Shown here piece by piece: positions 23 through 16,497 of a DNA stretch of 64,000 bases (its first letter is position 1; each line of letters begins with the position of its first letter). Both the position numbers and the translations under genes were made by a program. The stretch is taken from the sequence record MW812341.1; one strand, given 5' to 3'. Under the pieces are notes generated by a model. That model searched no databases. It was not told where the DNA came from and saw nothing but the letters and a program-made list of their open reading frames with translations.

Positions 23-59
23 CTCTACACTCCTTCGGGAGTGTAGAGTTATCTTTTTT
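23..59. terminator. Intrinsic terminator, probably bidirectional
   Basis: Stem CTCTACACTCC-TTCG-GGAGTGTAGAG, T-run on + strand at 53-59; lies just past the stop of 61..966. Confidence 0.8.
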
Positions 60-60
60 C

Positions 61-966
61 TTACGGTATCAATTCCAATACAACCATCCAGTTAATTGAA
101 CCAGTCTTCACTGCACTGGCTAATGTTTCTGGTGCTGTGTTAGAGACCGTGGCAAGTTTAGTGGTGTCCGCCATGTGCGCACTGCCCGTACCATTAATCG
201 ATGCCGCGTCCGATAAACGTGGTTGGATAGTAGCATCAGTCAACGCAGTAGGGTCTACACGCAGTCGGGCGTAAGTACCTTTCCATTCACTGTCGTTAAA
301 GTCAGCAGCGTCCGTAAGGTATTGCGTAAACGGTTTATCACTTAGGCGGATGGCGCGAGCAATATAGCGTTGTCCGCTCACTTCGATAATTGTCAACTGG
401 TTAACATTACCTGCATCACCCGTTGGAGTTTTACCGAAGTCATTTGTCCCGTAGATAAACCCTGCGTTGTAACCATTCTGCCAGTTTGAACTGGTGATAA
501 GCTGGCGGTTAGGAATGATTAAAATCTTCCCTTTGTACACAAACTTATACCAGATGTCCGTGGTGTTTACAGCCAGCGTGATACCAACAACACTTTTCAG
601 CTGTGCTTTAATCTTGTCGGTTATATCAGTTACGGTTGCCCATTCGGTTGGGGCAATCTCCCCAAAGTAACCACGCAGCCAATCACCACGTATAACCTTA
701 GACGGTCCTGGCCCCAAGTTAGAGTAATACCCTTGGGTCTGGTTTGCAGCGAAGGAACGATTGGAACCCTTCACAACCGCGACACTGTAGTAGTAGGTAT
801 TACCGACACGAACGTTGGTGTCTTCCCACGCAACAGCATCACCAGAAAGCGTAGCCACAGGCGTTCCTGGACTATTCGGGTCGATGGGTTTGTCACTCCG
901 ATAAATCTCGACGGAATCCAGATGTTGGTCAGTCTGGCTGTCCCATTTTAATTTAATCCCCATCAC
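61..966 (-). CDS. Virion/tail protein, cassette gene A1 (FN3-like N-domain + GPGP/GYFG domain)
   Basis: IKLKW..VEIYR..PGTPVATL..YYY then GPGP..GDW..GYFG..WYKF..GKILIIP; paralog of 3495 and 6893. Confidence 0.75.
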   Translation of the reverse strand: MMGIKLKWDSQTDQHLDSVEIYRSDKPIDPNSPGTPVATLSGDAVAWEDTNVRVGNTYYYSVAVVKGSNRSFAANQTQGYYSNLGPGPSKVIRGDWLRGYFGEIAPTEWATVTDITDKIKAQLKSVVGITLAVNTTDIWYKFVYKGKILIIPNRQLITSSNWQNGYNAGFIYGTNDFGKTPTGDAGNVNQLTIIEVSGQRYIARAIRLSDKPFTQYLTDAADFNDSEWKGTYARLRVDPTALTDATIQPRLSDAASINGTGSAHMADTTKLATVSNTAPETLASAVKTGSINWMVVLELIP

Positions 967-1943
967 TTGCCTCCCAGTTTAACTTCGCTAACACGTCCGA
1001 TGTATTCGATTACTGGCCACCAACATGAGCTTAACGTGCGTGCACGTACAATGGCGGATTCTATTGATGCCCTCACATGCGCTGCGTAGTTGTACGTACC
1101 GTAGCCACGGTGTAATACGTTGGCAGCACTCGGCACTTCCTGGGTAATGACGCCCTGCGTTTGTCGTCCGGCGTATTGGGTAGACGGAATGATGTTTGTT
1201 GGGTTGACAGATTCAACCGTGACCATTCTTTTACGAAGTGGGGCAAGATCAATCAACGGATACAGTAAATCTTCGTATTCCGAATAAATGCCCTGTGCCT
1301 CTGGTGCCACGTTCAAATCAATATTGCCGCCATTCCAAACCATTCCATCCGGAATACCTTTCGCTAAACGAATCAGGAATAAGTCTCCATTCAACTCGAA
1401 AGTGGTCAGCTGGTTAACGTTACCCGGAGAATTAACACCACCCATGTCGTCGGTGCCATATACCGCACCTGCGGTGTAAAGAGATGTCCAGGTCACGTCG
1501 TTAAAATAAATCCCCGGCACGAACAGGACTTTCCCATTACGGATAAATTTATACCACGTAGGATAGAACGGCCCAGTTGGAATACCAGAGGTGTTTTTTA
1601 ACGCACCTAAGATAGTTGAGCTGTTAACGAAGTCAGCTGACGGAAGAGAACCAAAGTAACCGTATGATTCGGTACCTTGTTTCAGCAGGTTCGGCCCTGG
1701 CCCTTTACGGTCGTTGACCTCGATTTTCTGAGGTTGGCTTACCACACGGTCGTTCTGCGTGTTAACCGCCCAAACGTAGTAATACGTTTTACCGAACAGT
1801 GCGGTGCTGTCCACCCATTCCAGCTCACCCCCGGTGAGTTTGACTAAGGGTGTGGTCAAATCCACAGTCGGTGTGTCGCCGCGATAGATCTCGACAGACG
1901 TCGCCCCTTTGTTGGGATTCTTCCATTTAAGTTTTAAGGCCAT
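963..1943 (-). CDS. Virion/tail protein, cassette gene B1 (FN3-like + GPGP/GYFG domain)
   Basis: MALKLKWKNPN..VEIYR..YYY; GPGP..GYFG..WYKF..GKVL..AGAVYGTDD; paralog of 4404 and 7843. Confidence 0.75.
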   Translation of the reverse strand: MALKLKWKNPNKGATSVEIYRGDTPTVDLTTPLVKLTGGELEWVDSTALFGKTYYYVWAVNTQNDRVVSQPQKIEVNDRKGPGPNLLKQGTESYGYFGSLPSADFVNSSTILGALKNTSGIPTGPFYPTWYKFIRNGKVLFVPGIYFNDVTWTSLYTAGAVYGTDDMGGVNSPGNVNQLTTFELNGDLFLIRLAKGIPDGMVWNGGNIDLNVAPEAQGIYSEYEDLLYPLIDLAPLRKRMVTVESVNPTNIIPSTQYAGRQTQGVITQEVPSAANVLHRGYGTYNYAAHVRASIESAIVRARTLSSCWWPVIEYIGRVSEVKLGGK

Positions 1944-1955
1944 GAGTAAGTCCTC

Positions 1956-3482
1956 TTATTTAAAGCCGTTGAGTTCCCCGTTGGCGGTGGATAAATTAAC
2001 CACCACCACTTCCTTGTAATCAGATGTAACCTGAACGACAGGAACTCGTAATATTGTATCCCAGGCCGCTTGTGCTACGTTCAACGGAGGCTCGGATTTT
2101 ATCCGTAGAAGCGGTATCTCTACCTCAGCCGCCCGAACCCAACTAACGTTAGCAACGTTAAACGGCGTATCTGTATCGCAGGAGAATAGGGGTTTAGTGA
2201 GCGCCCCTAAAGTTTCCCAAGCGATATCTGATACAATCAGTAATACTTCGCCTGTGTCTGGGCTGATGGTGAACAGTGGCTTACGTAAAACACCATCTGG
2301 CTCACCAATAAAGTTCTCTAACGGTACGGCGATTTTATCTAAGTCGGCCAGCTCCAGCATTGGTCGCCAACCGCCATTAAATGACGCCTTATCGTACATG
2401 CCCTGGTTGAGTCCGGTCATACTGCTACCGAACGCTTTCGTTGGGTCTTTCAGAGAAGTGGTCGAGAACCAGAACCCATTCCCATCGATGGTTTGCCCAT
2501 CCCATTCACCTGTTGCAAATCCACCACTTACCACAATCTTGGCAAACAGCCTTGCAACGTCACCGGTAGGGTCTGGCGTTTGGTTAATCGCCAGATAGTC
2601 CCACGGGTTTGATTCAGATAACCGTGGCATACACGGTGAGAGATACCAGTCACGTCCGTTTTCTACTTTGCGGATAACGGGACGTTGTGCCACGAGCACG
2701 CCATTAGCTGGGAACTGGAAGTCTTCATGGGTATCAGTCTCATAGACCGCTCCACGCACATACAGCTCTTGCCATCTGATGGTAATCTGGTTGTAGTTGG
2801 CGAGATACAGAATTTTTCCATCTCGAGCGAACTTATACCAGTATCGATTTGTCGGGAATGTTGCTAAGGTTCCCGCTGGGGTTGTTTGACCCTCATTAAT
2901 TCTCGACAGGAGCGCGGGTGCGCCAAATAATTCTGTTTCACTTACTAATCCAAAGTAACCTTCATTCAGGTCACCGATTAACAACACCTTAGTCCCTGGC
3001 CCTGACTCTGGGTAAGTCCCAACCGGTGTACGTGTCCAAGTGACCTGTAGAGAGCCTGTAAACGCCAGAGACGTTGCGGCAATATTCAGGGTAACTTGGG
3101 TCGGCGTATAACCGTAAGGGAGCTTGGTGGTGCCATTGCTCAAATCATCGGGCATAAGGTGCAGCCCATATTGGGCATTTAAAGACGGCAGCAAATCAGC
3201 ATAGGTTTTGGAAGACCCTTTTGCATCGAACACTACCGTGATGCCGTTAAACAGTGTCCCGAGATTTATTCGGTCGTAAAAGAACTGTTTCTTCCCGACG
3301 AATCCGGCCCCAGTGAAACCGTTTAAAGTAACGCGGGTATTACGCCCGCTGCTACCTAAACCGTTTGTACTAGGAGCAACGAGCACAATGACTGTGCTCG
3401 CGCTTAATCCTACCGTGCCGGGATTGTCCCGCATGACCTGCTGGCACAACAAATTCAGCGAGGAACTGTCGTACAACCCCAT
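1956..3482 (-). CDS. Virion/tail protein, cassette gene C1 (anchor-like N-domain + GPGP/GYFG domain, C-terminal GELNGF)
   Basis: LLCQQVMRDNP..YDRINL..F; YPESGPG..GYFG; ends NGELNGFK; paralog of 5407 and 8857. Confidence 0.75.
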   Translation of the reverse strand: MGLYDSSSLNLLCQQVMRDNPGTVGLSASTVIVLVAPSTNGLGSSGRNTRVTLNGFTGAGFVGKKQFFYDRINLGTLFNGITVVFDAKGSSKTYADLLPSLNAQYGLHLMPDDLSNGTTKLPYGYTPTQVTLNIAATSLAFTGSLQVTWTRTPVGTYPESGPGTKVLLIGDLNEGYFGLVSETELFGAPALLSRINEGQTTPAGTLATFPTNRYWYKFARDGKILYLANYNQITIRWQELYVRGAVYETDTHEDFQFPANGVLVAQRPVIRKVENGRDWYLSPCMPRLSESNPWDYLAINQTPDPTGDVARLFAKIVVSGGFATGEWDGQTIDGNGFWFSTTSLKDPTKAFGSSMTGLNQGMYDKASFNGGWRPMLELADLDKIAVPLENFIGEPDGVLRKPLFTISPDTGEVLLIVSDIAWETLGALTKPLFSCDTDTPFNVANVSWVRAAEVEIPLLRIKSEPPLNVAQAAWDTILRVPVVQVTSDYKEVVVVNLSTANGELNGFK

Positions 3483-3494
3483 GGTATTCTCCTT

Positions 3495-4400
3495 TTAGTT
3501 GAGCACCAACTCTAGCACCATGTACGTGTATGCCCCATTGGTGTTGCTGAGATTAGAGATACTCTCCGGCGAGTTGGCTGCGTTTAAATACACTGCGGAG
3601 TTAGTCCACATGTTCGCGAACATAGTTGAACCTCCGGTGTTATACGAACCAGTACCAGGCATATCACGATCGTCGTACTTCTGCTGGGTCCCGTTATAAC
3701 GCCATACACGACACATGGTGTTGAACCATTCGCCATCAGCGGTATATTGGGGATAACTGCTGGACGCTTGGCCGGGTGCATCGTAATCGAACAGATACGG
3801 TAAACGAACAACGTATTCGTAGCCGCTCTTGGTTACGGTCTTTCTCTGTGCTGTCTGACCCGCACCACTGGGTATCACTTTACCGTTATCCGGCGTACCC
3901 CAAGCAAAACCGTTCTGGTAAAAGAAGTTGTAAGACTGGCTGACGTTGGTGTTTGCATCGGGAATGAATAGAATGCGGTTTTTGTACACAAATTTGTGGA
4001 ACAAAGCCGGACTCTGGTTCCAGAGAGTTAAACCAGTCAAGGCATTCATTTCAGCAGCGTTGACAATGAAGTCTTTGGCATCGATGGTACCGAAGTATCC
4101 ACAGAACCAATCCCCGCGAATGATTTTTTGGGGACCTGGGCCAGTGTGTGGGAAATACCCCTGTATCACCGGGAACCCGAAGACCTTGTCCGTACCCTTC
4201 ACAGACACAATACGGTATTGATACGTTTTGTAGTTCTCTACCGTGTTGTCTTCGTAAGTGGTCGCCGTGCCTGGCAATACTGCCAGGGGAGTCCCAGGGT
4301 TATTCGGGTTGATGGTACCGCGTGGATTACTGATGCGGTAAATCTCAATCGAGTCCAGGGTTTGGTTTGCTTTCTGTTTCCACGTCAAAGTAATCGGCAT
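3495..4400 (-). CDS. Virion/tail protein, cassette gene A2
   Basis: MPITLTW..IEIYR..NPGTP; GPGP..GDWFCGYFG. Confidence 0.75.
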   Translation of the reverse strand: MPITLTWKQKANQTLDSIEIYRISNPRGTINPNNPGTPLAVLPGTATTYEDNTVENYKTYQYRIVSVKGTDKVFGFPVIQGYFPHTGPGPQKIIRGDWFCGYFGTIDAKDFIVNAAEMNALTGLTLWNQSPALFHKFVYKNRILFIPDANTNVSQSYNFFYQNGFAWGTPDNGKVIPSGAGQTAQRKTVTKSGYEYVVRLPYLFDYDAPGQASSSYPQYTADGEWFNTMCRVWRYNGTQQKYDDRDMPGTGSYNTGGSTMFANMWTNSAVYLNAANSPESISNLSNTNGAYTYMVLELVLN

Positions 4401-4403
4401 GAT

Positions 4404-5396
4404 TTACTCCATAAGCTCGATGACTGGGGCGAAGTAGCCGTTCGCTACCGCAGGGTCAGCGAGCGTGATTAGCTCCAAATCGTTCATTGTGGAATTTGAG
4501 GTGGCGATAGAGCGACCACGCATCACCACTTTCCCCGAGGTGGGGTCACGTTCCTGGCACAAGAAACCAGCACCCACTAACGACGCATTGGCTGGGAAAA
4601 TGGAGTAGGTCGGGGTATTAGTCCAGTTCGGAACCAGTTGCTTATCGGGCACCCATTCACAGAACGGATAAACAAGGTCATTGTACTCACAGCGACCGTA
4701 CGATGTCGCATCATGCATCTGCCCGTTAATAGCATCCGGCAGAGTCATGACGGTAGATTCACCCACGAAGGTTAAACCGCGCATTAAGCGCATGCGATAC
4801 GTGTCGCCCTGCCAGTCAAATAAACCACCCTGGTCTACCGCCGCTAAAGCCCCACGGCCGTTAGCAGGCCCCGGTCCATCTACACCGTAAACTAACCCAG
4901 CGTTATAAATGTCGTTCCACGAGTTCTTAACGTTCTGAATACGCCCAATGGTGTTAAGCAGATATAACACACGCCCACCTGAGAAGAACTTGTAGTGCGA
5001 CAGGAGAACGTCACCATTCAAACCGGTTAGAGAACGGAAACCAGCCGGGAATGAGTTGTACGTGAAACGTTCCGCCGGGTCAGTAACCAGACCCAGGTTA
5101 GCGCTATCGTCCGTATCACTAAGATACACTTGGTCTACACCACCCACACCACGACGGTTCTTAATCGTGATTTGTTTCTGTGGCCCCACAACGGTACGAC
5201 CCGTTACAGTGACAGAGAGTAGATAGAAATAAGTGGTATTGAGAATAACAGTGGTGTCCGTCCAGGAATTCTCACCATTCGACAGTGTCGCAATGGGCGC
5301 TGGTAACGCGGTGGGTACAAGCGCTTTGGTATCCCGGTAAACATTGACCACAGAACCTGCTGGGTTTTGGTTATTCCAGCGTAGGGTAAAGGCCAT
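4404..5396 (-). CDS. Virion/tail protein, cassette gene B2
   Basis: MAFTLRWNNQN..VNVYRDTK; hinge degenerate (GVGG); AGLVYGVDG, CEYNDL shared with B3. Confidence 0.75.
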   Translation of the reverse strand: MAFTLRWNNQNPAGSVVNVYRDTKALVPTALPAPIATLSNGENSWTDTTVILNTTYFYLLSVTVTGRTVVGPQKQITIKNRRGVGGVDQVYLSDTDDSANLGLVTDPAERFTYNSFPAGFRSLTGLNGDVLLSHYKFFSGGRVLYLLNTIGRIQNVKNSWNDIYNAGLVYGVDGPGPANGRGALAAVDQGGLFDWQGDTYRMRLMRGLTFVGESTVMTLPDAINGQMHDATSYGRCEYNDLVYPFCEWVPDKQLVPNWTNTPTYSIFPANASLVGAGFLCQERDPTSGKVVMRGRSIATSNSTMNDLELITLADPAVANGYFAPVIELME

Positions 5397-5406
5397 AACT
5401 TACTCC

Positions 5407-6882
5407 TCAAAGAAAGCCATTCAACTCACCATTGCACGAGGACAAGGTAGTTTTAGAAGATTTGTCGCTTTGGTCACTCTTCGCTACTAACGGCCTTGGG
5501 CCAGTGTAGTGTGGCGAATCGATCCCTATCGGTCGAACACCTGAACCCCCGTCAGCACTGCCTACCATCGGTTTAACGAGGTCAACGTGCGGTGCATCGA
5601 TCCCTATTGGAATCACGGTCAGGTCATTGTTGCTCGTGCCCAGTACCATCGGGAACGGAATCGCTTCGGTCGCAATCTCCACGATGTAGACTGGAACAAT
5701 CGGCTTATCAGTTACGACAGATGTGACAACAGGCCACGTCGCGGCATTCGTGACTTCGGTTGTGACGTCAGCCAACGGCATTACCATACCCGATGGGTCA
5801 ATGAGTTCAACCACTGGCCACCAGTCAGCACCGGTGAAGTCAGGAATCCACGAACTGTAGCCGCCATCGATGGCCATACGCAGACTCAATGTTCCGGTGT
5901 CGTGCTCTTGCATGTGCACATAGTCACTGAACACCAACCCGGACTCTTGACCCCAGCCACCAGATGCTACGTTCTTGTTAATTCGTGAAGCCAGTTTTAA
6001 AGCAGAGGCATCATCCCAGTTCCCTACCAGATTCAACGATGCGTTAAACCACGGGCAGCGTAACTGGAAGTAACGGGCTTTACCTTCGAACGATTTCGCC
6101 ATGTACAGCAATTGGTTAACGGGTGTGGTAGCGCCCGGAACTTTACCGGGGCCATCTGTACCGAACACCGCACCGTATTTGTACAGGTTTTGCCAGGACG
6201 TATTGCCTATCCCACGGGACGGGAGATACGTGACCTTGCCATTCATGAAGAACTTCAACCAAGTAAAGGTGTTGTCGAACGTAGGGCCAGCATTTGGCGA
6301 TAAGCCGTTCCACATCTCGTACCCGGTAAAGAAATCCTTTTGCGTAACTTTACCGAAGTAACCGAAGACATTGTCTCCCGCCAACAACTGTTTCGGGCCA
6401 GGGCCACTGTCGGGATAATTCCCATACGGTGCACTGGTGTAGGATACAGTCACACGTCCCGTATAGCACAAGGCCGTGTTGTTAACGTTTAATGCTACGG
6501 TCTGTACACCAACCCCACGCGGTAACACAGCATCAGCCGATGCAACATCAGCACGGTCAATGTTCACCCCATAGATTTCGTTAATGGTTGGCAGTATATC
6601 ACCCAACGTTTTCATTTCAGGTGTCAGCACAATCGTCAGCGACATCCCGGCAAATAACGTCGGGATTGAGAGGCGATCGTAAGAGACCACCAACTCACCG
6701 ATGAATCCTTTCCCCGGTTTCCCTATCAACGTAACCTGCGAATTACGCCCATTGATATTTCGGAAGACCGGACTCCCATTCACCGCAATGGCGTCTGGGG
6801 TAATCTGGCCTGCCAAATTAGGGTTGTCTCGCACGACTTGCTGACAGAGTTGCTGCATCGCAGACTCTGTATACAAACTCAT
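5407..6882 (-). CDS. Virion/tail protein, cassette gene C2
   Basis: LCQQVVRDNP..YDRLSI..F; YPDSGPGP..GYFG; ends NGELNGFL. Confidence 0.75.
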   Translation of the reverse strand: MSLYTESAMQQLCQQVVRDNPNLAGQITPDAIAVNGSPVFRNINGRNSQVTLIGKPGKGFIGELVVSYDRLSIPTLFAGMSLTIVLTPEMKTLGDILPTINEIYGVNIDRADVASADAVLPRGVGVQTVALNVNNTALCYTGRVTVSYTSAPYGNYPDSGPGPKQLLAGDNVFGYFGKVTQKDFFTGYEMWNGLSPNAGPTFDNTFTWLKFFMNGKVTYLPSRGIGNTSWQNLYKYGAVFGTDGPGKVPGATTPVNQLLYMAKSFEGKARYFQLRCPWFNASLNLVGNWDDASALKLASRINKNVASGGWGQESGLVFSDYVHMQEHDTGTLSLRMAIDGGYSSWIPDFTGADWWPVVELIDPSGMVMPLADVTTEVTNAATWPVVTSVVTDKPIVPVYIVEIATEAIPFPMVLGTSNNDLTVIPIGIDAPHVDLVKPMVGSADGGSGVRPIGIDSPHYTGPRPLVAKSDQSDKSSKTTLSSCNGELNGFL

Positions 6883-6892
6883 TACGTTCCCC

Positions 6893-7831
6893 TTATGGAA
6901 GAATCAACTCCAACGCTAAGAAATAACCCACGTTTGAATTCAAGGAGTTGGATGTCTGAATCGTGACCGGGTTGTAGGAGTAGTTATAGAAGAGCGTCGA
7001 TGTGGCGTACAACGGTACCATCGCGGTAGTCCCTGCGTCGGTCGTATTGCTGTTGGTGCCGAGTACCTGTAAACCGTCTAACTTACCTTGCCCACGACCC
7101 TGCTTATCAATAGTTTCGGTGTAGTTGTAACCCGTAAGGTACAAACGCGCCATGGTATTACGCCATTCACCTTCGTCATACGCCGAGTTACCGCCAGGCG
7201 AACCATACTCCGTCGCATAAGGCAAACGGATACGGTACTGACGACCTGCTTTCGCTACGCGGGCGTTCTGTGCGACCGCAGCTGACCCACTCGGGACAAC
7301 GATGCCGTTATCATCCGTTCCGTATGCCATACCACGGCCGTATATGACGAGATATGTCGTCGTTCCTGACTGTGTCGTCGGGAAGAAAACAATGCGTCCT
7401 TTATAGATGAATTTATGCCAACCCACTATGTTGTTTTGGAACAGAGCAGATTGGGCTGTGGTTAACTGTGCCTGAATTTCAGCACGGTTAAAGAAATCAT
7501 CCGGGGAAACAACACCGAAATAACCGCAATACCAGTCACCGCGAATAGGCACCTGTGGTCCTGGGCCAACATCGAGATAGAACGCTTGCACAATCTTGGC
7601 CCCGAAAACACGTTCCGTCCCTTTCACTGAGGCTACCCAGTACGAGTACATGGTTTTCTCAGTCAAGTTAGCAACGGGTTCAACGTATTCGGTTGCGGTA
7701 CCGGGTAATGTCGCTACTGGGGTGCCGGGGTTATTAACGTCGATGGTCGCGTCGTAACCCACCTTACGGTAAATCTCAAAGCCGGTTAGGGCTTTGCTGG
7801 CTTGAGACGGCCAGCTTAAACGAATAGTCAT
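6893..7831 (-). CDS. Virion/tail protein, cassette gene A3
   Basis: MTIRLSW..FEIYR..NPGTPVATL; GPGP..GDWYCGYFG. Confidence 0.75.
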   Translation of the reverse strand: MTIRLSWPSQASKALTGFEIYRKVGYDATIDVNNPGTPVATLPGTATEYVEPVANLTEKTMYSYWVASVKGTERVFGAKIVQAFYLDVGPGPQVPIRGDWYCGYFGVVSPDDFFNRAEIQAQLTTAQSALFQNNIVGWHKFIYKGRIVFFPTTQSGTTTYLVIYGRGMAYGTDDNGIVVPSGSAAVAQNARVAKAGRQYRIRLPYATEYGSPGGNSAYDEGEWRNTMARLYLTGYNYTETIDKQGRGQGKLDGLQVLGTNSNTTDAGTTAMVPLYATSTLFYNYSYNPVTIQTSNSLNSNVGYFLALELILP

Positions 7832-7842
7832 GTCCGCCTCTT

Positions 7843-8844
7843 TTATTCAACCAGTTCAAAGATAGGAATGTACCGACCAATTTGGCCAGGTGGTAGATAG
7901 ATGATTTTCTGGAACTGTCCCGGATAGACTGCTGCTGCTGTCGTATTGATACCACGGTGCAACACGCGGTCTTGGGCCGTATCGTGTTCCTGACACAAGA
8001 TACCTGCGTTCAGATACGGGTATGTTGTGGTGTTGTTTGGCAAACCACCTGCGGCAATAACCGAACCGGTAAGGACTTGATAGTTTGCCCAGCGTTGTTT
8101 AACCGGAAACTCATTAACCATCGCATATATCAGATCATTGTATTCGCAGTAATCCGTTAAGGCTGAAACCGCATCGTGGTCTTTTCCAGCGTAGGCGTCA
8201 TTAAACGCCAATGCCGGGACGTCACTGTCTTTCGTTAATCCACGCGGTAAACGGATGCGGTAGGTGTCATTAAGATGAATCATCTTCGCATCTTGCTTGG
8301 TATCCACCAAACTGCCGTGACCGCCAGTTGGACCAAAATCATCCGTGCCGTAAACCAACCCCGACTGATACAATGCGCTCCAACTCACCGACCCTAGGAA
8401 TACGTTCGGGAGAACGGTATAAAGAACTTTACCGTTACGAATGAACTTGTACAGGGGAATACGGTCAGGGAATACTGACGGGAACATCGCCTGGAAAGCC
8501 GCAGGCATCTGCGAGAATAACGGCTGCTCCGCATAGGGCACAGGTCCCAGATAACCTAAGCGGTCATCGCCCTGAATAAAGGCCATTGGCCCCACGCCAC
8601 GTTTCACCGCAACGGTGTACTGCTGGTTGGCGCTGGCAATCGTTTTACCGTTCGCAGTAACAGTCAAAAGGTAGAAGTACGTCTGTCCTGCAACAGCTGT
8701 GGTATCACGGTAAGAGGTTTCACCGTTAGACAATGTCGCCAACGGTGCAGGTAAAGCGGTTACTGAAATGGTCTTCGTGTCACGGTACACATTGACTACC
8801 GTGGCGGCGGTGTTGGGGTTTGTCCACCGTAATGTAAATGACAT
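7843..8844 (-). CDS. Virion/tail protein, cassette gene B3
   Basis: MSFTLRWTNPN..VNVYRDTK; GVGP..GYLG..SGLVYGTDD. Confidence 0.75.
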   Translation of the reverse strand: MSFTLRWTNPNTAATVVNVYRDTKTISVTALPAPLATLSNGETSYRDTTAVAGQTYFYLLTVTANGKTIASANQQYTVAVKRGVGPMAFIQGDDRLGYLGPVPYAEQPLFSQMPAAFQAMFPSVFPDRIPLYKFIRNGKVLYTVLPNVFLGSVSWSALYQSGLVYGTDDFGPTGGHGSLVDTKQDAKMIHLNDTYRIRLPRGLTKDSDVPALAFNDAYAGKDHDAVSALTDYCEYNDLIYAMVNEFPVKQRWANYQVLTGSVIAAGGLPNNTTTYPYLNAGILCQEHDTAQDRVLHRGINTTAAAVYPGQFQKIIYLPPGQIGRYIPIFELVE

Positions 8845-8856
8845 GACGTCTTACCT

Positions 8857-10275
8857 CTATTTGAAACCGTTGAGTTCGCCATCCGAGCTAGAAAGGTTTG
8901 TACCATCGGGCGGGGTATACAACTCGGTCTTCGTTGGCGCTGGTGTATAATCCAACGTTTTCGGTAGACCCAGCGAAACCGGCGCGAGGGCAAACTGGTT
9001 TTCAGTACGTGCCGGTGCAGGCGTGATGTCCACCGTACCCGGTAAACCGAATATTACAGGTGCTAATTGCATCTGATTTTCAGGGCGGATTGGCGGTGGG
9101 GTAATCGTGTAGTCCATGCGTCCTACGATATCCTGCAACGCAATCGTGTTGGAAGACGTATCAACCAACTCAACAATCGGCCACCAGTACCATGATGTAC
9201 TTTGGCTAGTCTTCCCGACGATAGACGCTGTACCCGCAGCTAACGTACCGTAACGACAGTTCGCGGTTGATGTGGCTGAGTTCTGATAAAGAATGTTCGC
9301 CGCTGTCCACTCGCTGTTGTTGTTACTTTCCCACGTACCGTTCCTTACCTTCAGCAACATGTCTAACATACTGCCTGCTACGTTGGCAGGAACCAACGTC
9401 CCGTTTGGTGAAGGGTCTGGGTCTTGCAAACTGATAGTCGGTAAACGTATCCGCAGATAGAAACGTCCTTCAGATTTGGTCAACGTCATAATCTTCGATT
9501 GGTTTACAGGTGTACCCGCCGGGTATTTCCCCGTGTCGTCCGTACCGTAAACCAGTCCTGCCTGGTAAAGCATCTGCCAGCTTACATTGCTGCCGGTCGG
9601 GCTTACCGGGAAGTAAAACACAGTGCCCTGATAGAAGAACTTATACCAACCTTCAGTCCCGCCACTGTACGTGGTGTGCCCTGTCAGTTGCGATGCCGCG
9701 ACAAACTCTGCACGGGTGTATAGTTCTGCCGTAGTGACACGCCCGAAATAACCCATGGTGGTGTTACCCGCCAGCAGGTATTTTGGCCCTGGGCCAGAAT
9801 TCGGATAATAACCAATTTGTTCCGTCTGGTACGAAAAGTACAGCGCACCCGTAAACGCAGCACAGGCAGCCGTCACGGTAATCTGTGCGTCTTGCTTCGT
9901 GGCATTCGGGTTGAGGGCTGTAGTCAGGTTAGTGACTTCGTCCGGACGGAGGTTGATTCCTAAAACGTCATTAATAATGGGTAAGGCATCAGCGATGCTT
10001 TTAATGTCTGACGAGAAATAGAGAACCGGTCGCAGTGAAGAACTCCAGAGACTACCCAGCAACACACGGTCATAGTTGAGCGTCAGGGTACCGATATAGC
10101 CAGAGCCAGGATACGCCGTAAACTTTACTTCGGTATTGCGTCCGTTTGTTGAACGGGCGACAGGTCCGGAGGTCAGCACCGTATTAGCTGGCGTCAACTT
10201 CACAGGCAGATTGGGGTTATCCCGATTCACCTGGTCGTAGACGAGCTGTAGCGCTTCCTTGGAATAGAATTGCAT
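8857..10275 (-). CDS. Virion/tail protein, cassette gene C3
   Basis: LVYDQVNRDNP..YDRVLL; YPNSGPGP..GYFG; ends DGELNGFK. Confidence 0.75.
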   Translation of the reverse strand: MQFYSKEALQLVYDQVNRDNPNLPVKLTPANTVLTSGPVARSTNGRNTEVKFTAYPGSGYIGTLTLNYDRVLLGSLWSSSLRPVLYFSSDIKSIADALPIINDVLGINLRPDEVTNLTTALNPNATKQDAQITVTAACAAFTGALYFSYQTEQIGYYPNSGPGPKYLLAGNTTMGYFGRVTTAELYTRAEFVAASQLTGHTTYSGGTEGWYKFFYQGTVFYFPVSPTGSNVSWQMLYQAGLVYGTDDTGKYPAGTPVNQSKIMTLTKSEGRFYLRIRLPTISLQDPDPSPNGTLVPANVAGSMLDMLLKVRNGTWESNNNSEWTAANILYQNSATSTANCRYGTLAAGTASIVGKTSQSTSWYWWPIVELVDTSSNTIALQDIVGRMDYTITPPPIRPENQMQLAPVIFGLPGTVDITPAPARTENQFALAPVSLGLPKTLDYTPAPTKTELYTPPDGTNLSSSDGELNGFK

Positions 10276-10301
10276 AACGACTCCTAACGCCCGTGCGTTG
10301 C

Positions 10302-10323
10302 AATAAAGGCCCCGAAGGGCCTT
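10302..10323 (-). terminator. Intrinsic terminator
   Basis: Minus strand AAGGCCC-TTCG-GGGCCTT followed by TATT. Confidence 0.7.
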
Positions 10324-10326
10324 CCA

Positions 10327-11154
10327 TTAGCTGTTGTAGTGGTAATACGCCACACCTTTCACCCCAGCCTCATCGATGCCCGTTTGGATAACAACGCGGT
10401 CGTAATCCTTATTGGCGCTCGCTGCGGTCGTGGTTGCGACATCCTGAACAGTGTTGCTGTTCAGTGGCGCGGAGTAAGGCGGTATGCCCAGGCTATCCAG
10501 CAGGCTACGCAGACCTTCCCATTGCGGTAAACCAGCAGCAGTAACCTGCAACAGGTTTTTGTACGCAGTGAAGTCGATACCGTACGTCAACATGTCGATA
10601 CACTTCTGATTCAGCGCCGGGTCAACGTTGTGCGTCAATGCCGGTACTGCATCTTTCGTGATGGACGTGTCGAGCACTGGCAAGCCGCGACTATAACGAA
10701 CGTTCATCGACCCGCGATAAGCAGGAGACCCTGCCAATGCGCTGATGGTAGTGGTGTTGGTATAGTTCGGGCTACCCACGCCAGATAGGCCGTAGTTCTG
10801 CAAGTCCCAAGTGCCGAAGTTAATCCCGTACGTATCAAAGATTACCGGCAGCGCCGCATGGACGGTGGCCGCATCAAAGGTCACGAACTGTGCTTGTGCG
10901 CTCGTCCCATTCGGGAACAGCGTGGTGATACTTACACGGTCGTAGAACAACGTAATCTGGTCACGGAAACCAGTTCCTTGCACACCACGTAAGCGTACAG
11001 AGGTATTACGGTTGTTACTGGCCGCATTCACGGCCACGTTGGTAATCTTTTCGATGATACAGTTGTCCGCAGTAACCGGCACCGGAAGGTTTGGGTTATC
11101 GCGGTTAATCAGATCAAAGACCAAAATATTCGAGGGTTTTCCGTAAATAAGCAT
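10327..11154 (-). CDS. Virion (tail/baseplate) paralog family D
   Basis: LINRDNP..YDRVSI..LF N-domain shared with C genes; ends YYHYN. Confidence 0.7.
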   Translation of the reverse strand: MLIYGKPSNILVFDLINRDNPNLPVPVTADNCIIEKITNVAVNAASNNRNTSVRLRGVQGTGFRDQITLFYDRVSITTLFPNGTSAQAQFVTFDAATVHAALPVIFDTYGINFGTWDLQNYGLSGVGSPNYTNTTTISALAGSPAYRGSMNVRYSRGLPVLDTSITKDAVPALTHNVDPALNQKCIDMLTYGIDFTAYKNLLQVTAAGLPQWEGLRSLLDSLGIPPYSAPLNSNTVQDVATTTAASANKDYDRVVIQTGIDEAGVKGVAYYHYNS

Positions 11155-11156
11155 CT

Positions 11157-12044
11157 TTACACCTCGTTCGGATCGTCAAGGTCGTTGAACTGGAGGTACA
11201 TGGTACCTTTGAACGACGTGTTGGTGGCTGGGAGTTTCAACACGAGTGCGTATTTGTACTTCGCGTTGGTCGGCATAGTGACCGGGTTGTTCAGTCCCAC
11301 GCTAACCACTTCTGCACCCGCCAGACCCCAAGCGGAGCTGGTTGTTGCTACCCACGAACCGCCCGTGATGTCTTTCAGGATATTGGTCATATCCGTCAGA
11401 GGCTGACCGGTCAACACACCTGGAGTAAACGCCAGCAGCTGGTCGTGGTACTTGGTGAAGTTGAACGGATAGCTGTAGACCTCGGCGATTGTACCGGAGA
11501 CAGTTTCGGAGCCCATCTGCCCATTCGGGTATTTCAGACCCGTCAAGGTGTTGGTGGTAACGGTGGACACCAGAGATTCATCGCCTTTCACAACTTTGAA
11601 GTTATACTGATCAATCCAACCAATTGAGTTGGTCTTCGCTTTCACCACAACGGTACCGGCAGTCTTGTCGGTGTTCCAGAGGATGTCCGCTTCTTCCAGG
11701 TCATCAGTTGTGAACACGAAGCCGTAGCGTTGGTTCAAACCAACAAGCGCCTGAGAGAGTTTGGCATTCGACGGCCCGATAGCCAACGTGTCACCAATCA
11801 GCACCACAATGTCCTGCACTCGCAGACGGTTGTAATAGATGTTCTTCTTACCTGACCAGGTAGAACCTACTACCCCATCAGCCGTGATTTTAATCTGAGT
11901 GTTCTTCTCAGTCGTGTTACCTTTGTCAGTACCACGAATGTCTTTCGGCGCGCTCCAGACGAAGTCGGTTGCTTTGATGCTCAGCGAGTTCGCAACGTTA
12001 ATCGCGTTCAGCAGCACGTCTTTAGCAGGAATATAGATTGCCAT
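11157..12044 (-). CDS. Virion (tail/baseplate) paralog family D
   Basis: LLNAIN..YNRL; LTGLKYP linker; ends LQFND. Confidence 0.7.
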   Translation of the reverse strand: MAIYIPAKDVLLNAINVANSLSIKATDFVWSAPKDIRGTDKGNTTEKNTQIKITADGVVGSTWSGKKNIYYNRLRVQDIVVLIGDTLAIGPSNAKLSQALVGLNQRYGFVFTTDDLEEADILWNTDKTAGTVVVKAKTNSIGWIDQYNFKVVKGDESLVSTVTTNTLTGLKYPNGQMGSETVSGTIAEVYSYPFNFTKYHDQLLAFTPGVLTGQPLTDMTNILKDITGGSWVATTSSAWGLAGAEVVSVGLNNPVTMPTNAKYKYALVLKLPATNTSFKGTMYLQFNDLDDPNEV

Positions 12045-12055
12045 TCGCTTTTATC

Positions 12056-12904
12056 CTAGTTGTTGTAGTGCAGCAGCAAATCGCCACCAACTTGAGAATC
12101 TTTGATGTTGTAGATCAACAGTGCGTTGTCGTACATCGTGTTCATGCGAACGTCACCTGGTGAGGTACCAGTCTTCAAACGCATAACAGAAGACCCCGTT
12201 GGGTCAAACGTCGGAATGCCGTATGCCGTCAACGTATCCATCAGGTTCTCAGTGAGCCCCTGGTCGAAGTTGTAACCCACATCTAAACGGCCGTTCTTAA
12301 ACGACGCCATCAGTTGTGGTTCGTTGGTGAAGTCACTACCGTAAGCCAACATCGTGAGACATTTCTTCGGTACATCACCACCGGTGGCAGGATGTGTCAG
12401 CTCCGCCAGAAGGTCATTCACGACCTGGTCTTCGAAGCTGTTCTTGCCACGGACAGACAGGAACGTCACCGACCCTGTGTACTGAATACAGCTGCCGAGT
12501 ACGCTCACCGTATTCTTAATGTTCAGGTAGACGTACACATCCGGAATGTCTTCTGGCACCAGGTTCAAGCCATAACGTCCATTCAGGTTCTGTACAAATG
12601 CCGCCTTCTTCGACGTGACATTTAACCAACCGTACGCGTTAGGTGACGTCACTTGCGGCGTCATGTTCTTGAACAAGTCGTTCAGCGACAAGCGTTTATA
12701 GCGGAACGTCTGTACGCCCACATACCCACGTCCTTGACGACCGCGCACGGTAATCTCAGTGTTGGCACCGCTTGGTGTCGTTGCAATAGCCTTGGGCACA
12801 CCAATGTTGGCATTGTCCAAATCCATAGGCATAATCGCCCCTGGGTTCTCGGCATTAATCGCATCGTACAGGAATTGTCGCTGAGACAGACTATATAAAG
12901 CCAT
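12056..12904 (-). CDS. Virion (tail/baseplate) paralog family D
   Basis: LYDAINAENP..YKRLSL..LF; ends LLLHYNN. Confidence 0.7.
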   Translation of the reverse strand: MALYSLSQRQFLYDAINAENPGAIMPMDLDNANIGVPKAIATTPSGANTEITVRGRQGRGYVGVQTFRYKRLSLNDLFKNMTPQVTSPNAYGWLNVTSKKAAFVQNLNGRYGLNLVPEDIPDVYVYLNIKNTVSVLGSCIQYTGSVTFLSVRGKNSFEDQVVNDLLAELTHPATGGDVPKKCLTMLAYGSDFTNEPQLMASFKNGRLDVGYNFDQGLTENLMDTLTAYGIPTFDPTGSSVMRLKTGTSPGDVRMNTMYDNALLIYNIKDSQVGGDLLLHYNN

Positions 12905-12921
12905 AGTAGCCTCCTCGGCCT

Positions 12922-12966
12922 AAAAAAAGAAAGGAGTACACCAAGAGGAGGAATCCCTCCTCCTGG
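12922..12966 (-). terminator. Intrinsic terminator
   Basis: Stem CCAGGAGGAGG/CCTCCTCTTGG then T-rich tract on minus strand. Confidence 0.7.
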
Positions 12967-12976
12967 CGCGGCCTAA

Positions 12977-13888
12977 TTAGGCATTGAAGTGCAGGTACAG
13001 AATACCCTGGAAGTTAGAGCACAGGGTGTCAGACAGTTGCAGTTTCAGAACCTGAGTGTACGCAGGGTTTGCGCCTTCAACAGGTTTCTTCGGCTCTTCG
13101 CCAGTTGCAGTGCCGTCATCCGCAGTTGGGCCAACGTACAGAACGTTTGCACCGTGCAGGTTGTAGTCTGCCGCAGCAACGTTATCAACCCACAGTTCCG
13201 GAACCACTTTGTTCAGTTCAACCGGGAATGCGGAGTCTTCTGCGATAACACCTTCAGCCTGAACTTTCAGGAAGGCGGCGATTGGGGTGCAGTCTACGCC
13301 GTAAGAGTAGATGTAACCCTGACCTTTCGCATCGCTTGGGCCGTCTGGGTACACCAGACCGTCCAGTTTGGTTTGAGTAACAACCAGGCTCAGACGTTCA
13401 CCAACCTGTGGCTTAGGCCCGATTTTAACTGGGATGGCACCGAGGTAGGCATAGCAGGCAGTGTCAAAGGTAATGACGTGGTCAACTGGAACCGGGTCTG
13501 GAGCGTCTGGGTCAACAACCGGCGGGTTGGTACCGTCTGGAATAGTAGCAGAGACGATGTCGTCTGCGGTCAGTTTCAGACCATACTGCGAGTTCAGCGT
13601 ATCCAGCAAGTCTTCGGTTTTCTTCGGAGACTTAACGTCCAGATACGCGGTCACGTTACGGAACAGGTTCGTACCATCGAGACGGTCGTAAGTTACAGTC
13701 TGGTCACCAATGTAACCGGAGTTCTTACGTGCGGTCAGCACCATAGAGGTGTTGCGGTCAGGACTGTCGCCAGTGGCTGGCGTTGGGTCGCCCAGTTTGA
13801 TTTTGCCCAGCTCGAGATCAGCATCCGGGTTCTTTTCGTTGATGAAATCAAGAACCAGCAGATCAGACGTTTTGTTTAAAGGTTTCAT
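12977..13888 (-). CDS. Virion (tail/baseplate) paralog family D with Pro/Asp-rich insert
   Basis: LDFINEKNP..YDRLDG..LF; LDGLVYP; ends LYLHFNA; insert PPVVDPDAPDPVP. Confidence 0.7.
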   Translation of the reverse strand: MKPLNKTSDLLVLDFINEKNPDADLELGKIKLGDPTPATGDSPDRNTSMVLTARKNSGYIGDQTVTYDRLDGTNLFRNVTAYLDVKSPKKTEDLLDTLNSQYGLKLTADDIVSATIPDGTNPPVVDPDAPDPVPVDHVITFDTACYAYLGAIPVKIGPKPQVGERLSLVVTQTKLDGLVYPDGPSDAKGQGYIYSYGVDCTPIAAFLKVQAEGVIAEDSAFPVELNKVVPELWVDNVAAADYNLHGANVLYVGPTADDGTATGEEPKKPVEGANPAYTQVLKLQLSDTLCSNFQGILYLHFNA

Positions 13889-13909
13889 TCTAACTTCCTT
13901 TACTCAGGA

Positions 13910-14755
13910 TTAATCAGGGTCGTTGTAGTGAAGGTACAAACGCCCGCCAAGGTTTAGACTATACAGCGACAACTCAACAATCACGACATTATCAACGGAT
14001 GGGTTCGTCGGGAATTCCGCTTTGTTCACCCCGTTATAGACCACCACTGCCTCTTTGAGGTTGTAGTCTATTGGGTTACGGTAAACCGACCAACCGTCGC
14101 CCGTGACCGTTTTCAGAATCTGTGCCAGACGGTCTGTAGTAATACCCAGTCCGTATGCTTTAAACTCTGTCGCGTAGTTGTCAAAACGCCATGGATACGA
14201 ATACACCGCACCCTGACCGACTTTGGTGTTGAAATAAGGATAACTGTACGGCATCACCGTTACAGGTTCAAAGTTGACCGGTAACAATGCGTCCCCAGGG
14301 AGAAGCTGTACCTGCTGCTGACCAATCCACCCTAAGGAGGTTGGCTCGGCAATCAAATCCAGCATCCATGTCTTGCGGTCAATGAGCGTGTTCTCCACGT
14401 CACTTGCCCGAAGCTTGAGGCCGTAATACTGGTTAATCAAACCCACGATATCGTGCGCAGCAAAGACAGCGTCCAAGCGGGCAGGTACACGCAGTGGTTG
14501 CACACCATCGATATCGGTGAACATCTCCGCGAAGTCTACACGGTCGTAATAAACCGTGGTGGCTCCGATTGCGTTTGCCGTGGCCAGCGCTTGAATACGC
14601 ACCATGCTGTTGCAGCCCTGGGCTTTGTCAATATCGCCGGGTTCTGTCGGGATACCCGGCGTACCGAACACCACATCCTCAACTTTGAGGTCGAGGTGGT
14701 TCTCGGTGTTCAGCTCTTTCAGAATAACTTCTTCTGCGGTGGCTAAGAGTGGCAT
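13910..14755 (-). CDS. Virion (tail/baseplate) paralog family D
   Basis: LKELNTEN..YDRVDF; GQGAVYSY; ends LYLHYND. Confidence 0.7.
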   Translation of the reverse strand: MPLLATAEEVILKELNTENHLDLKVEDVVFGTPGIPTEPGDIDKAQGCNSMVRIQALATANAIGATTVYYDRVDFAEMFTDIDGVQPLRVPARLDAVFAAHDIVGLINQYYGLKLRASDVENTLIDRKTWMLDLIAEPTSLGWIGQQQVQLLPGDALLPVNFEPVTVMPYSYPYFNTKVGQGAVYSYPWRFDNYATEFKAYGLGITTDRLAQILKTVTGDGWSVYRNPIDYNLKEAVVVYNGVNKAEFPTNPSVDNVVIVELSLYSLNLGGRLYLHYNDPD

Positions 14756-14763
14756 GTGAATCC

Positions 14764-15606: not shown

Positions 15607-15615
15607 TCAGCCCTC

Positions 15616-16410: not shown

Positions 16411-16476
16411 CGCGTTAACTCGGTTATTAGGTTTCCTAAGGCCAACACTACCTTGGTAGCGATAACCCCCTGCCAG

Positions 16477-16497
16477 CATATTAAAGGACGAGGACGT
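16477..16497 (-). promoter_or_regulatory. Partial ACG-N14-TATG motif upstream of tail block
   Basis: Minus strand AACG-14 nt-TATG; lacks the T-run of the other copies. Confidence 0.35.

What the first reader, a model, noticed from the sequence alone, without database searches (positions are those of the whole stretch)
61..10275. Three tandem copies of a three-gene virion cassette (C-B-A)x3: a candidate multiplexed tail-fibre/receptor-binding system
Seen in the sequence: in transcription order the nine genes run C3-B3-A3, C2-B2-A2, C1-B1-A1. C genes (472-508 aa) start with the LxxQVxRDNP..YDR anchor-like domain and end in GELNGF. B genes (326-333 aa) start M(A/S)xxL(K/R)WxNxN. A genes (301-312 aa) start MxIxLxW with PGTP. 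Order and size are preserved in each copy while sequences have diverged strongly, and the whole unit sits between two terminators (10302-10323 and 23-59). Inference: each triad builds one heteromeric appendage (C docks to the baseplate, B and A are added via FN3-like domains), so the virion could carry three fibre types, or choose among them, to widen host range. I do not know a described mechanism for this layout.
Basis: partly seen in the sequence, partly recalled or inferred. Interest (0 to 1): 0.75.

Follow-up and report, generated by a model that had tools for sequence, protein, structure and literature searches.

The report
Three-gene virion adhesin-like cassettes, repeated
A giant Erwinia phage carries three diverged copies of a three-gene virion-protein cassette that relatives gain, lose and swap as whole units; it belongs to a known jumbo-phage filament family, looks built for host binding, and its counterparts in a related phage travel with the head, not the tail.

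Summary
Window 61-10275 (Erwinia phage pEa_SNUABM_9, 100% match) holds nine intact, tightly packed minus-strand genes forming (C-B-A)x3. The genes are orthologs of Salmonella phage SPN3US gp145-153, part of the published 'paralog family B', and C carries the N-domain of DUF7941, a Chimalliviridae filament family described in 2026. New here: (i) C = DUF7941 N-domain + core module + disordered repeat tail, while A and B = FN3 + the same core; (ii) across 11 phages there are five triad types, always gained or lost as whole C-B-A units (2-4 per genome) in a conserved order, with congruent C, B and A trees; (iii) a recombination junction sits exactly at the C N-domain/core boundary; (iv) elsewhere the same N-domain is fused to a Gp38 adhesin, lectins and glycosidases. 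This fits exchangeable host-binding cassettes. However, quantitative proteomics of two tail-less SPN3US mutants recovers gp145-153 with heads at capsid-like ratios, so 'tail fibre docked to the baseplate' is not supported. Function and exact location remain untested. The family is known; the triad cassette organisation appears undescribed.

The parts
8857..10275 (-). C gene of triad type I (the finding's C3), 472 aa. DUF7941 N-domain aa 1-151 (nt 9823-10275); core module aa 154-372 (nt 9160-9816); Pro-rich repeat tail aa 373-472 (nt 8860-9159) ending in the conserved C-terminal motif.
   Evidence: ortholog of SPN3US gp145
7843..8844 (-). B gene of triad type I (B3), 333 aa. FN3-like domain aa 1-82, then the core module to the C-terminus.
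   Evidence: ortholog of SPN3US gp146
6893..7831 (-). A gene of triad type I (A3), 312 aa. FN3-like domain aa 1-83 (sub-threshold Pfam fn3 hit), then the core module.
   Evidence: ortholog of SPN3US gp147
5407..6882 (-). C gene of triad type II (C2), 491 aa. N-domain aa 1-150 (nt 6433-6882); core aa 153-362 (nt 5797-6426); repeat tail aa 363-491 (nt 5410-5796) with a short Pro-hydrophobic motif about every 13 residues.
4404..5396 (-). B gene of triad type II (B2), 330 aa. FN3-like domain plus core module.
3495..4400 (-). A gene of triad type II (A2), 301 aa. FN3-like domain plus core module.
1956..3482 (-). C gene of triad type III (C1), 508 aa. N-domain aa 1-151 (nt 3030-3482); core aa 154-380 (nt 2343-3023); disordered repeat tail aa 381-508 (nt 1959-2342). 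A recombination junction relative to contig L012 lies at about nt 3000-3030, which is the N-domain/core boundary.
   Evidence: (AF2: residues 1-390 pLDDT about 90, 390-508 below 50)
963..1943 (-). B gene of triad type III (B1), 326 aa. FN3 fold aa 1-80, then the core module aa 80-317.
   Evidence: (pLDDT 90.2)
61..966 (-). A gene of triad type III (A1). 300 aa from the annotated ATG at 963, or 301 aa from the GTG at 966. FN3-like domain plus core module.
10327..16479 (-). Upstream context in the same gene string: seven tandem full-length DUF7941 paralogs of 275-303 aa (S1-S7), orthologs of SPN3US gp144-gp138. These are the likely filament-forming subunits.
   Evidence: (235-294 bits over the whole Pfam model)
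10302..10323 (-). GC-rich hairpin (8-bp stem, UUCG loop) in the 51-nt gap between S1 and the first triad. The U tract is weak, so it may be an attenuator or RNA 3'-end element; this is not shown.
   Evidence: not called by the scan
23..48 (.). Bidirectional terminator-like hairpin (11-bp stem) between the last triad gene and the convergent plus-strand gene.
   Evidence: for the convergent gene

Best explanation
The nine genes are three paralogous cassettes (types I, II and III, out of at least five types circulating in SPN3US-like jumbo phages). Together they encode a low-copy virion appendage complex belonging to the DUF7941 filament system of Chimalliviridae. In each cassette, C supplies an N-terminal DUF7941 domain that plugs the complex into DUF7941 polymers or anchors (the S1-S7 proteins encoded just upstream). 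C also supplies a core module and a disordered, repeat-containing tail with a conserved end motif. B and A each supply an FN3 domain plus the same core module. I infer that the C core, B and A assemble into one distal unit that binds a host-surface structure, so a virion displays several alternative binding units at once. By orthology with SPN3US gp145-153, the complexes are attached to the head, not the tail. Shown: the homology, domain architecture, unit-wise inheritance, junction recombination and fusion partners of the N-domain. From the literature: virion presence and head fractionation of the orthologs. Inferred: heteromer formation, exterior location and host binding.
For: The window is identical to pEa_SNUABM_9, and SPN3US gp138-153 are syntenic and orthologous. 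Domain architecture comes from Pfam, PHROGs, my own HMMs and AF2 models. The C N-domain matches a chain of the phiKZ outer baseplate structure 9xqd (probability 1.0, TM 0.55). The A/B N-terminus has an FN3 fold. The triad is a unit: in 11 phages, 2-4 complete C-B-A triads occur in the conserved order I-II-X-W-III. The C, B and A trees recover the same five clades, and Mantel r is 0.85-0.91 with 0 of 2000 permutations reaching it. The block 'C core + tail + B + A' of type III is near-identical to contig L012 (dS about 0.1), while the same gene's N-domain is saturated; identity jumps from 0.6 to 0.98 at the domain junction. Host-binding context: CR5_144, in a triad position, is the N-domain fused to a Gp38 adhesin (86 bits, and PDB 9v85 at E 6e-8). 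In a search of 1.84 billion representative proteins the N-domain is also fused to ConA-like lectin domains, an arabinofuranosidase, SPRY/Ig domains and beta-propellers. The Goslar paper shows purified gp22 forming filaments and predicts head-to-tail oligomers. Head association: SPN3US Table S2 ratios are 1.06-1.67 for gp145-153 against 0.03 or less for sheath, tube and gp168-170, and a second tail-less mutant agrees. Spectral counts per kDa within each SPN3US triad agree within about 2.6-fold and resemble the 12-copy portal (my arithmetic).
Against: There is no direct evidence that C, B and A bind each other, that they are on the outside of the capsid, or that they bind host structures. The core module has no solved or annotated relative, so a binding function is not visible in the fold. 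Published capsid reconstructions of SPN3US (about 30 A) do not report fibres. The Goslar authors place DUF7941 filaments at the peripheral baseplate, phiKZ gp127 is modelled there, and SPN3US gp237, an N-domain-only member, fractionates with tails. Where measurable, dN/dS is 0.05-0.31, so there is no signal of diversifying selection. All localisation data come from SPN3US, not from this phage.
Confidence: 0.45

Rival explanations
1. The triads are parts of baseplate-anchored fibres: C docks through its DUF7941 N-domain to the peripheral baseplate or to filaments growing from it, and the complexes act as tail-side receptor-binding units. Their presence in SPN3US head preparations is carry-over of self-assembling filaments.
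For: The C N-domain matches the phiKZ outer baseplate chain in 9xqd. phiKZ gp127 terminates the gp139 band in the baseplate. The Goslar paper proposes universal baseplate association. SPN3US gp237, an N-domain-only member encoded beside tail genes, is in the tail fraction.
Against: gp145-153 are retained in CsCl-purified tail-less heads of two different mutants at the same normalised ratio as capsid and portal proteins. That fits stoichiometric attachment better than carry-over. The Goslar maps show no density for these proteins, and that paper does not consider the SPN3US data.
Confidence: 0.2
2. The triad proteins are internal head proteins, packaged with the DNA and possibly ejected, as the SPN3US authors tentatively suggested for abundant family B members ('Head ejection?').
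For: The head fractionation and the authors' annotation of gp141, gp143 and gp160. No external fibres are reported on low-resolution SPN3US capsid maps.
Against: The family's N-domain is fused to adhesin, lectin and glycosidase domains that make sense only outside the particle. FN3 domains on phages are typically surface-exposed (established knowledge, not tested here). One family member is in the phiKZ baseplate. Purified Goslar gp22 forms long filaments. No family B member is among the protease-processed head proteins.
Confidence: 0.15
3. The triads are head-surface decoration or stabilisation proteins with no receptor function. In this view the paralogy reflects different quasi-equivalent capsid sites, not different ligands.
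For: Head fractionation and low, roughly equal abundance. Purifying selection. FN3/Ig-like decoration proteins are common on large capsids (established knowledge).
Against: The number of triads varies from 2 to 4 among phages that share the same capsid genes, and whole types are swapped, which is unexpected for fixed lattice sites. The recombination junction that separates anchor from distal block and the adhesin fusion in the CR5 array resemble receptor-binding modules.
Confidence: 0.1

Closest known systems
SPN3US 'paralog family B' (gp83, gp138-154, gp160/161; Thomas et al. 2016, Ali et al. 2017, and the 2023 SPN3US proteomics paper PMC10052503)
   Same: The nine genes are positional orthologs of gp145-153, and the upstream seven are orthologs of gp138-144. 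These are virion proteins of unknown function that are head-associated in tail-less mutants.
   Different: The papers treat the family as one set of 17-21 paralogs. The passages I read do not describe the C-B-A triad sub-structure, the FN3+core architecture of A and B, the triad types, or unit-wise gain and loss. SPN3US has types I, II and a second II, whereas this phage has I, II and III.
DUF7941 (PF25613) filament proteins of Chimalliviridae, e.g. Goslar gp22/gp23 and phiKZ gp126/gp127 (Goslar structure paper, Sci Adv 2026)
   Same: C proteins carry the DUF7941 N-terminal globular domain (79-93 bits) and a long disordered segment. The neighbouring S1-S7 proteins are full-length DUF7941. Some family members carry host-recognition domains.
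   Different: C matches only model positions 1-154 of 276. Its disordered segment is C-terminal, after an unrelated core module (hhalign probability 0 against the S C-terminal half). A and B have no DUF7941 at all. The paper proposes baseplate anchoring, whereas the SPN3US orthologs of the triads fractionate with heads.
Modular receptor-binding proteins with a conserved N-terminal anchor and exchangeable distal part (T-even gp37/gp38 adhesins and many tail fibres and spikes)
   Same: A conserved anchor domain, a sharp recombination junction at the anchor/distal boundary, cassette-like exchange, and several alternative units per genome. A Gp38 adhesin domain is fused to the same anchor in CR5.
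   Different: A, B and C have no sequence or fold similarity to known fibre, spike or adhesin proteins. The orthologs are not in the tail fraction. The distal unit would be encoded by three genes instead of one.
Capsid or head fibres of flagellotropic phages (e.g. phage 7-7-1, cited in the Goslar paper)
   Same: This would be a head-attached flexible appendage used for first contact with the host. SPN3US is reported to use flagella as its receptor.
   Different: No homology was tested or found. No head fibres have been imaged on SPN3US-like phages in the papers I read. The receptor of pEa_SNUABM_9 is unknown.

Membership tests
Pfam DUF7941 (PF25613) | Match to the family model above the gathering score | tested here: met
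   C proteins score 79.5-93.1 bits against a cutoff of 27, but only over model positions 1-154 of 276. S1, S4 and S7, the three S proteins scanned, match the full length at 235-294 bits. A and B proteins have no hit, so they are not members.
Pfam DUF7941 (PF25613) | N-terminal globular domain with the fold seen in phiKZ gp127 | tested here: met
   [quoted passage not shown] Identifying that chain as gp127 is inferred from the paper.
Pfam DUF7941 (PF25613) | Head-to-tail oligomerisation through a disordered segment docking on the next N-domain | not testable with these tools
   C has a disordered segment at aa 390-508 (pLDDT below 50) with significant internal repeats. No complex prediction tool was available.
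SPN3US paralog family B | Orthology and synteny with gp138-154 | tested here: met
   Same gene order and sizes. Reciprocal best classes and shared clades in the trees.
SPN3US paralog family B | Present in virions and retained in tail-less heads | not testable with these tools
   Known only for SPN3US. No proteome of pEa_SNUABM_9 was found.
Tail fibre / baseplate receptor-binding proteins | Sequence or fold homology to known fibre, spike or adhesin families | tested here: not met
   A, B and C gave no such hit in Pfam, PDB sequence search or Foldseek against the PDB. PHROGs annotates them only as 'virion structural protein'.
Tail fibre / baseplate receptor-binding proteins | Location in the tail fraction of the virion | tested here: not met
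   From the literature, for the orthologs: the head/wild-type ratio is 1.06-1.67 for gp145-153, against 0.03 or less for sheath, tube and the fibre candidates gp168-170.
Fibronectin type III domain | FN3 beta-sandwich fold at the N-terminus of A and B | tested here: met
   B1 model residues 1-80 match many FN3 structures (probability 1.00, TM 0.56-0.65). The Pfam fn3 hit is below threshold (17.2 bits against 25, in A3 only).
Gp38 tail-fibre adhesin (PF05268) | Match to the adhesin model | tested here: not met
   A, B and C of the window have no hit. Only CR5_144 (86.2 bits) and P0116 (75.5 bits), which share the N-domain, are members.

The most novel reading that the evidence does not exclude
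Each triad encodes a three-gene heteromeric adhesin: one anchored subunit, C, plus two FN3-bearing subunits, B and A, all built on the same core fold. The adhesin is displayed on head-attached DUF7941 filaments. SPN3US-like jumbo phages would then carry a combinatorial set of 2-4 such adhesins drawn from at least five types and exchanged as cassettes by recombination at the conserved anchor/core junction. This would be a head-borne, multi-gene counterpart of tail-fibre host-range modules, and it would also resolve the head-versus-baseplate disagreement between the SPN3US and Goslar studies.
Probability: 0.3. Interest if true: 0.75.

Novelty: new variant of a known kind. Interest (0 to 1): 0.55.

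Why it matters
DUF7941 / paralog family B is the largest paralog family reported in a single phage genome and makes up a large share of jumbo-phage virion proteins, yet its function and even its location are unsettled. SPN3US proteomics places it on or in the head. The 2026 Goslar study places it at the baseplate and does not discuss the SPN3US data. Recognising that part of the family is organised as exchangeable three-gene cassettes, with an anchor/distal recombination junction and with adhesin, lectin and glycosidase relatives, gives a concrete hypothesis that descriptive evidence can test. The hypothesis covers how these phages first contact their hosts and why the family is so expanded. 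It also gives annotators a rule for genes now labelled only 'hypothetical' or 'virion structural protein': C is N-domain + core + tail, and A and B are FN3 + core.

Tried and rejected
- PDB sequence searches with C1 and A2 found nothing, apart from weak galectin-1 hits to A2 whose individual domains are not significant. I do not rely on them.
- Foldseek found no solved relative for the core module of C or B. BFVD returned only other unannotated jumbo-phage virion proteins.
- I tested whether the EPS depolymerase genes next to the array in Wellington, Asesino and pSal-SNUABM-04 carry the DUF7941 N-domain. They do not.
- I tested whether the core module is a diverged S-protein C-terminal half. 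It is not (hhalign probability 0).
- Tandem Repeats Finder found no DNA-level repeats in the C tails. The repeats are visible only at the protein level.
- dN/dS against the closest contig was saturated for types I and II, and showed purifying selection for type III (0.06-0.24 per gene, 0.05-0.26 across its measurable domains). No diversifying selection could be shown.
- Sigma-70-type promoter scans found fewer sites than in shuffled sequence (6 against 17 expected), so they say nothing about internal promoters.
- No paper on pEa_SNUABM_9 addresses these genes.

Full report
**Identity and observation.** The first 16.6 kb of the window is 100% identical to Erwinia phage pEa_SNUABM_9 (MW812341.1, genus Machinavirus), an SPN3US-like jumbo phage of the phiKZ-related group. 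GenBank starts the last gene at the ATG at 963 instead of the GTG at 966.

All-vs-all BLASTP confirms three classes with full-length homology across copies:
- A: 34-41% identity
- B: 29-38% identity
- C: 27-31% identity, with E-values down to 6e-68

The quoted terminal motifs are present. Genes are separated by -1 to 12 nt, so they form one polycistronic string. The hairpin at 23-48 is a good bidirectional terminator. The one at 10302-10323 is a real GC hairpin with a UUCG loop but lacks a proper U tract.

- A and B are paralogs of each other.
- A, B and C all share one core module.
- The C N-domain is shared with seven more tandem genes, S1-S7, at 10327-16479.
- HMMs built from the window find no further members between 16.5 and 64 kb.
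- Three small N-domain-only genes lie just beyond the window start.

**Domain architecture.**
- C has the Pfam DUF7941 N-domain (aa 1-151; 79-93 bits, model positions 1-154 of 276).
- Next in C comes a core module (to about aa 365-380).
- C ends in a tail of 100-130 residues that AlphaFold2 leaves disordered (pLDDT below 50 for residues 390-508, against about 90 for residues 1-390).
- The tails contain significant internal repeats of about 26 residues (z 4.4-13.6, with 0 of 200 shuffles reaching the score).
- The tails end in a motif kept strictly in 22 of 30 C proteins from 11 phages, and in relaxed form in 28 of 30.
- A and B have an FN3 fold at the N-terminus (B1 model pLDDT 90; Foldseek probability 1.0 to many FN3 domains), followed by the same core module.
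- The core has no solved relative. It is not related to the C-terminal half of the S proteins. It recurs in virion proteins of many phiKZ-like phages.
- S1, S4 and S7, the three S proteins scanned against Pfam, are full-length DUF7941 proteins; S2, S3, S5 and S6 are their BLASTP paralogs.
- The only significant structural match of the C model is a 150-residue chain of the phiKZ outer peripheral baseplate structure 9xqd. From the phiKZ atlas this is presumably the gp127 N-domain.

**Not unique to this phage.** SPN3US has the same layout: gp138-144 are the seven S genes and gp145-153 are three triads. A tblastn search with C1 finds matches in 84 phage records, 61 of them covering at least 80% of the protein. 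I annotated the arrays of 11 phages and built trees for C, B and A. All three trees resolve the same five triad clades.

| Phage | Triad types, in gene order |
|---|---|
| ChrisDB, pEa_SNUABM_4 | I, II, X, III |
| pEa_SNUABM_9 (this window) | I, II, III |
| Caitlin, Asesino | I, X, III |
| SPN3US | I, II, II' (then gp154) |
| pEa_SNUABM_11 | I, X, W |
| Wellington, Kwan | I, W |
| pSal-SNUABM-04 | I, X |
| CR5 | two atypical DUF7941 genes, then a mixed triad |

In the finding's naming, type I is C3-B3-A3, type II is C2-B2-A2 and type III is C1-B1-A1. Type I is first in the ten arrays that carry it (CR5 lacks it), and type III is last in the five arrays that carry it whole. The CR5 triad has a type-III C with type-X B and A.

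The C, B and A distance matrices are strongly congruent (Mantel r 0.85-0.91, 0 of 2000 permutations). Within-type identity is 0.51-0.59 and between-type identity is 0.30-0.34. The triad therefore duplicated as a unit before these genera diverged, and has since been kept, lost or exchanged only as a whole.

**Modular exchange.** A close metagenomic relative, L012, carries the same I-II-III array. Against it, the S genes and triads I and II are 42-74% identical at the protein level, with saturated synonymous sites. The type III block is nearly identical from the C core through B and A: B is 96% and A is 99% identical, and dS is about 0.08-0.1 across most of the block. Yet the N-domain of that same C gene is highly diverged. 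Nucleotide identity along the gene jumps from about 0.6 to about 0.98 at gene position 450-480, which is exactly the N-domain/core junction. So the block 'core + tail + B + A' has moved as one piece relative to the anchor domain. Where it can be measured, selection is purifying, with dN/dS of 0.05-0.31.

**What is fused to the N-domain elsewhere.** In CR5, a 722-aa gene occupying a triad position has the DUF7941 N-domain followed by a Gp38 tail-fibre adhesin domain (PF05268, 86 bits). It also matches the solved 'receptor-recognizing protein gp38' (9v85, E 6e-8). A profile of the ten N-domains in the window found 3,268 clusters at E of 1e-3 or better among 1.84 billion representative proteins. 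Many of these carry two to five copies of the domain. Long members fuse it to these domains:
- another Gp38 adhesin
- up to six ConA-like lectin / LamG domains
- an alpha-L-arabinofuranosidase catalytic domain
- SPRY and Ig domains
- beta-propeller repeats

These are extracellular binding or glycan-processing modules. This extends the Goslar paper's observation of carbohydrate-binding, glycoside hydrolase and LRR fusions.

**Literature, and a discrepancy.** Thomas et al. 2016 and Ali et al. 2017 defined SPN3US 'paralog family B' (gp83, gp138-154 and others). They assigned it to the head because all members were found in tail-less 64_112(am27) particles. The function is unknown, with 'Head ejection?' suggested for the abundant members.

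The 2023 SPN3US proteomics paper (PMC10052503) gives numbers for CsCl-purified heads of the tail-tube mutant 255(am107):
- gp145-153 are recovered at 1.06-1.67 times their wild-type share.
- The major capsid protein is at 1.39 and the portal at 1.40.
- Sheath, tube and the fibre candidates gp168-170 fall to 0.03 or less.

Spectral counts per kDa for gp145-153 are 3.6-13. That is similar to the 12-copy portal (11.7), and values within a triad agree within about 2.6-fold (my arithmetic, and rough).

In contrast, the 2026 Goslar paper shows that purified gp22 forms filaments and predicts head-to-tail oligomers. It proposes a baseplate-anchored 'DUF7941 fibre cloud', citing the phiKZ gp127 N-domain in the outer baseplate. 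That paper does not mention SPN3US.

I found that SPN3US gp237 is an N-domain-only DUF7941 protein (94 bits). It is encoded beside tail genes and fractionates with tails at a ratio of 0.06. The family therefore has members in both compartments, and the triad orthologs fall in the head-associated set. SPN3US is reported to use flagella as its receptor. None of the passages I read describes the triad sub-structure.

**Interpretation.** The best-supported reading is that each triad encodes one low-copy virion appendage unit of the DUF7941 system. C anchors it through the N-domain, and the C core, B and A form the distal, exchangeable part. The phage displays three such units, probably for host-surface binding, and they are attached to the head, not the tail.

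- Shown here: homology, architecture, unit-wise inheritance, junction recombination and the fusion partners.
- From the literature: virion presence and head fractionation of the orthologs.
- Inferred: heteromer formation, exterior location and ligand binding.

I rate these at 0.45, 0.2, 0.15 and 0.1 respectively.

**Verdict.** The tail-fibre/baseplate placement is contradicted by the only direct data on orthologs, and the claim that the layout is undescribed is only partly true. The family is known, but the triad cassette organisation, its five types, the anchor/distal recombination junction and the wider fusion repertoire appear to be new descriptions. No gene in the region is broken.

Noticed in passing
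window 12938-12969 (minus strand): The strongest terminator-like hairpin of the array (14-bp stem) sits in the 72-nt gap after S4. The SPN3US ortholog of S4, gp141, is by far the most abundant member of the tandem array gp138-154 (2239 PSM against 200-1038 for its S-gene neighbours). The hairpin may mark an expression tier or a stabilised 3' end.
   Followed up: partly
L004 (Cronobacter phage CR5) 15821-17989: CR5_144 (722 aa) is a DUF7941 N-domain fused to a Gp38-type tail-fibre adhesin domain with glycine-rich motifs. It occupies a triad position in the array. The preceding CR5_143 (438 aa) is an N-domain plus an unassigned C-terminal part, like SPN3US gp154.
   Followed up: yes
L014 (SPN3US) 1865-2416; L001 (pEa_SNUABM_9 record) 9020-10695: Small N-domain-only DUF7941 proteins exist. 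SPN3US gp237 (183 aa) lies next to tail genes and is in the tail fraction. Three genes of 170-177 aa lie just outside the window start in pEa_SNUABM_9. They could be anchors or caps for the filaments.
   Followed up: partly
L006 4413-6311, L007 1889-3703, L008 4506-6311: In Wellington, Asesino and pSal-SNUABM-04, an annotated EPS depolymerase gene lies immediately upstream of the S-array. It lacks the DUF7941 N-domain and is absent at the equivalent place in pEa_SNUABM_9.
   Followed up: partly
window 12989-13879 (plus strand): A 296-aa ORF lies antisense to S4 and spans almost all of it. It has no annotation in the record and is most likely a chance open frame in GC-balanced coding DNA.
   Followed up: no
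proteins P0072-P0075, P0195: Many metagenomic proteins carry the DUF7941 N-domain two to five times in tandem within one polypeptide, i.e. covalently linked 'filament' repeats.
   Followed up: no
L005 (Caitlin) 9278-10693; L009 (pEa_SNUABM_4) 8934-10313: In these two phages the type I C proteins end before the conserved C-terminal motif that 28 of 30 C proteins keep. These are natural variants that could show what the end motif does.
   Followed up: no
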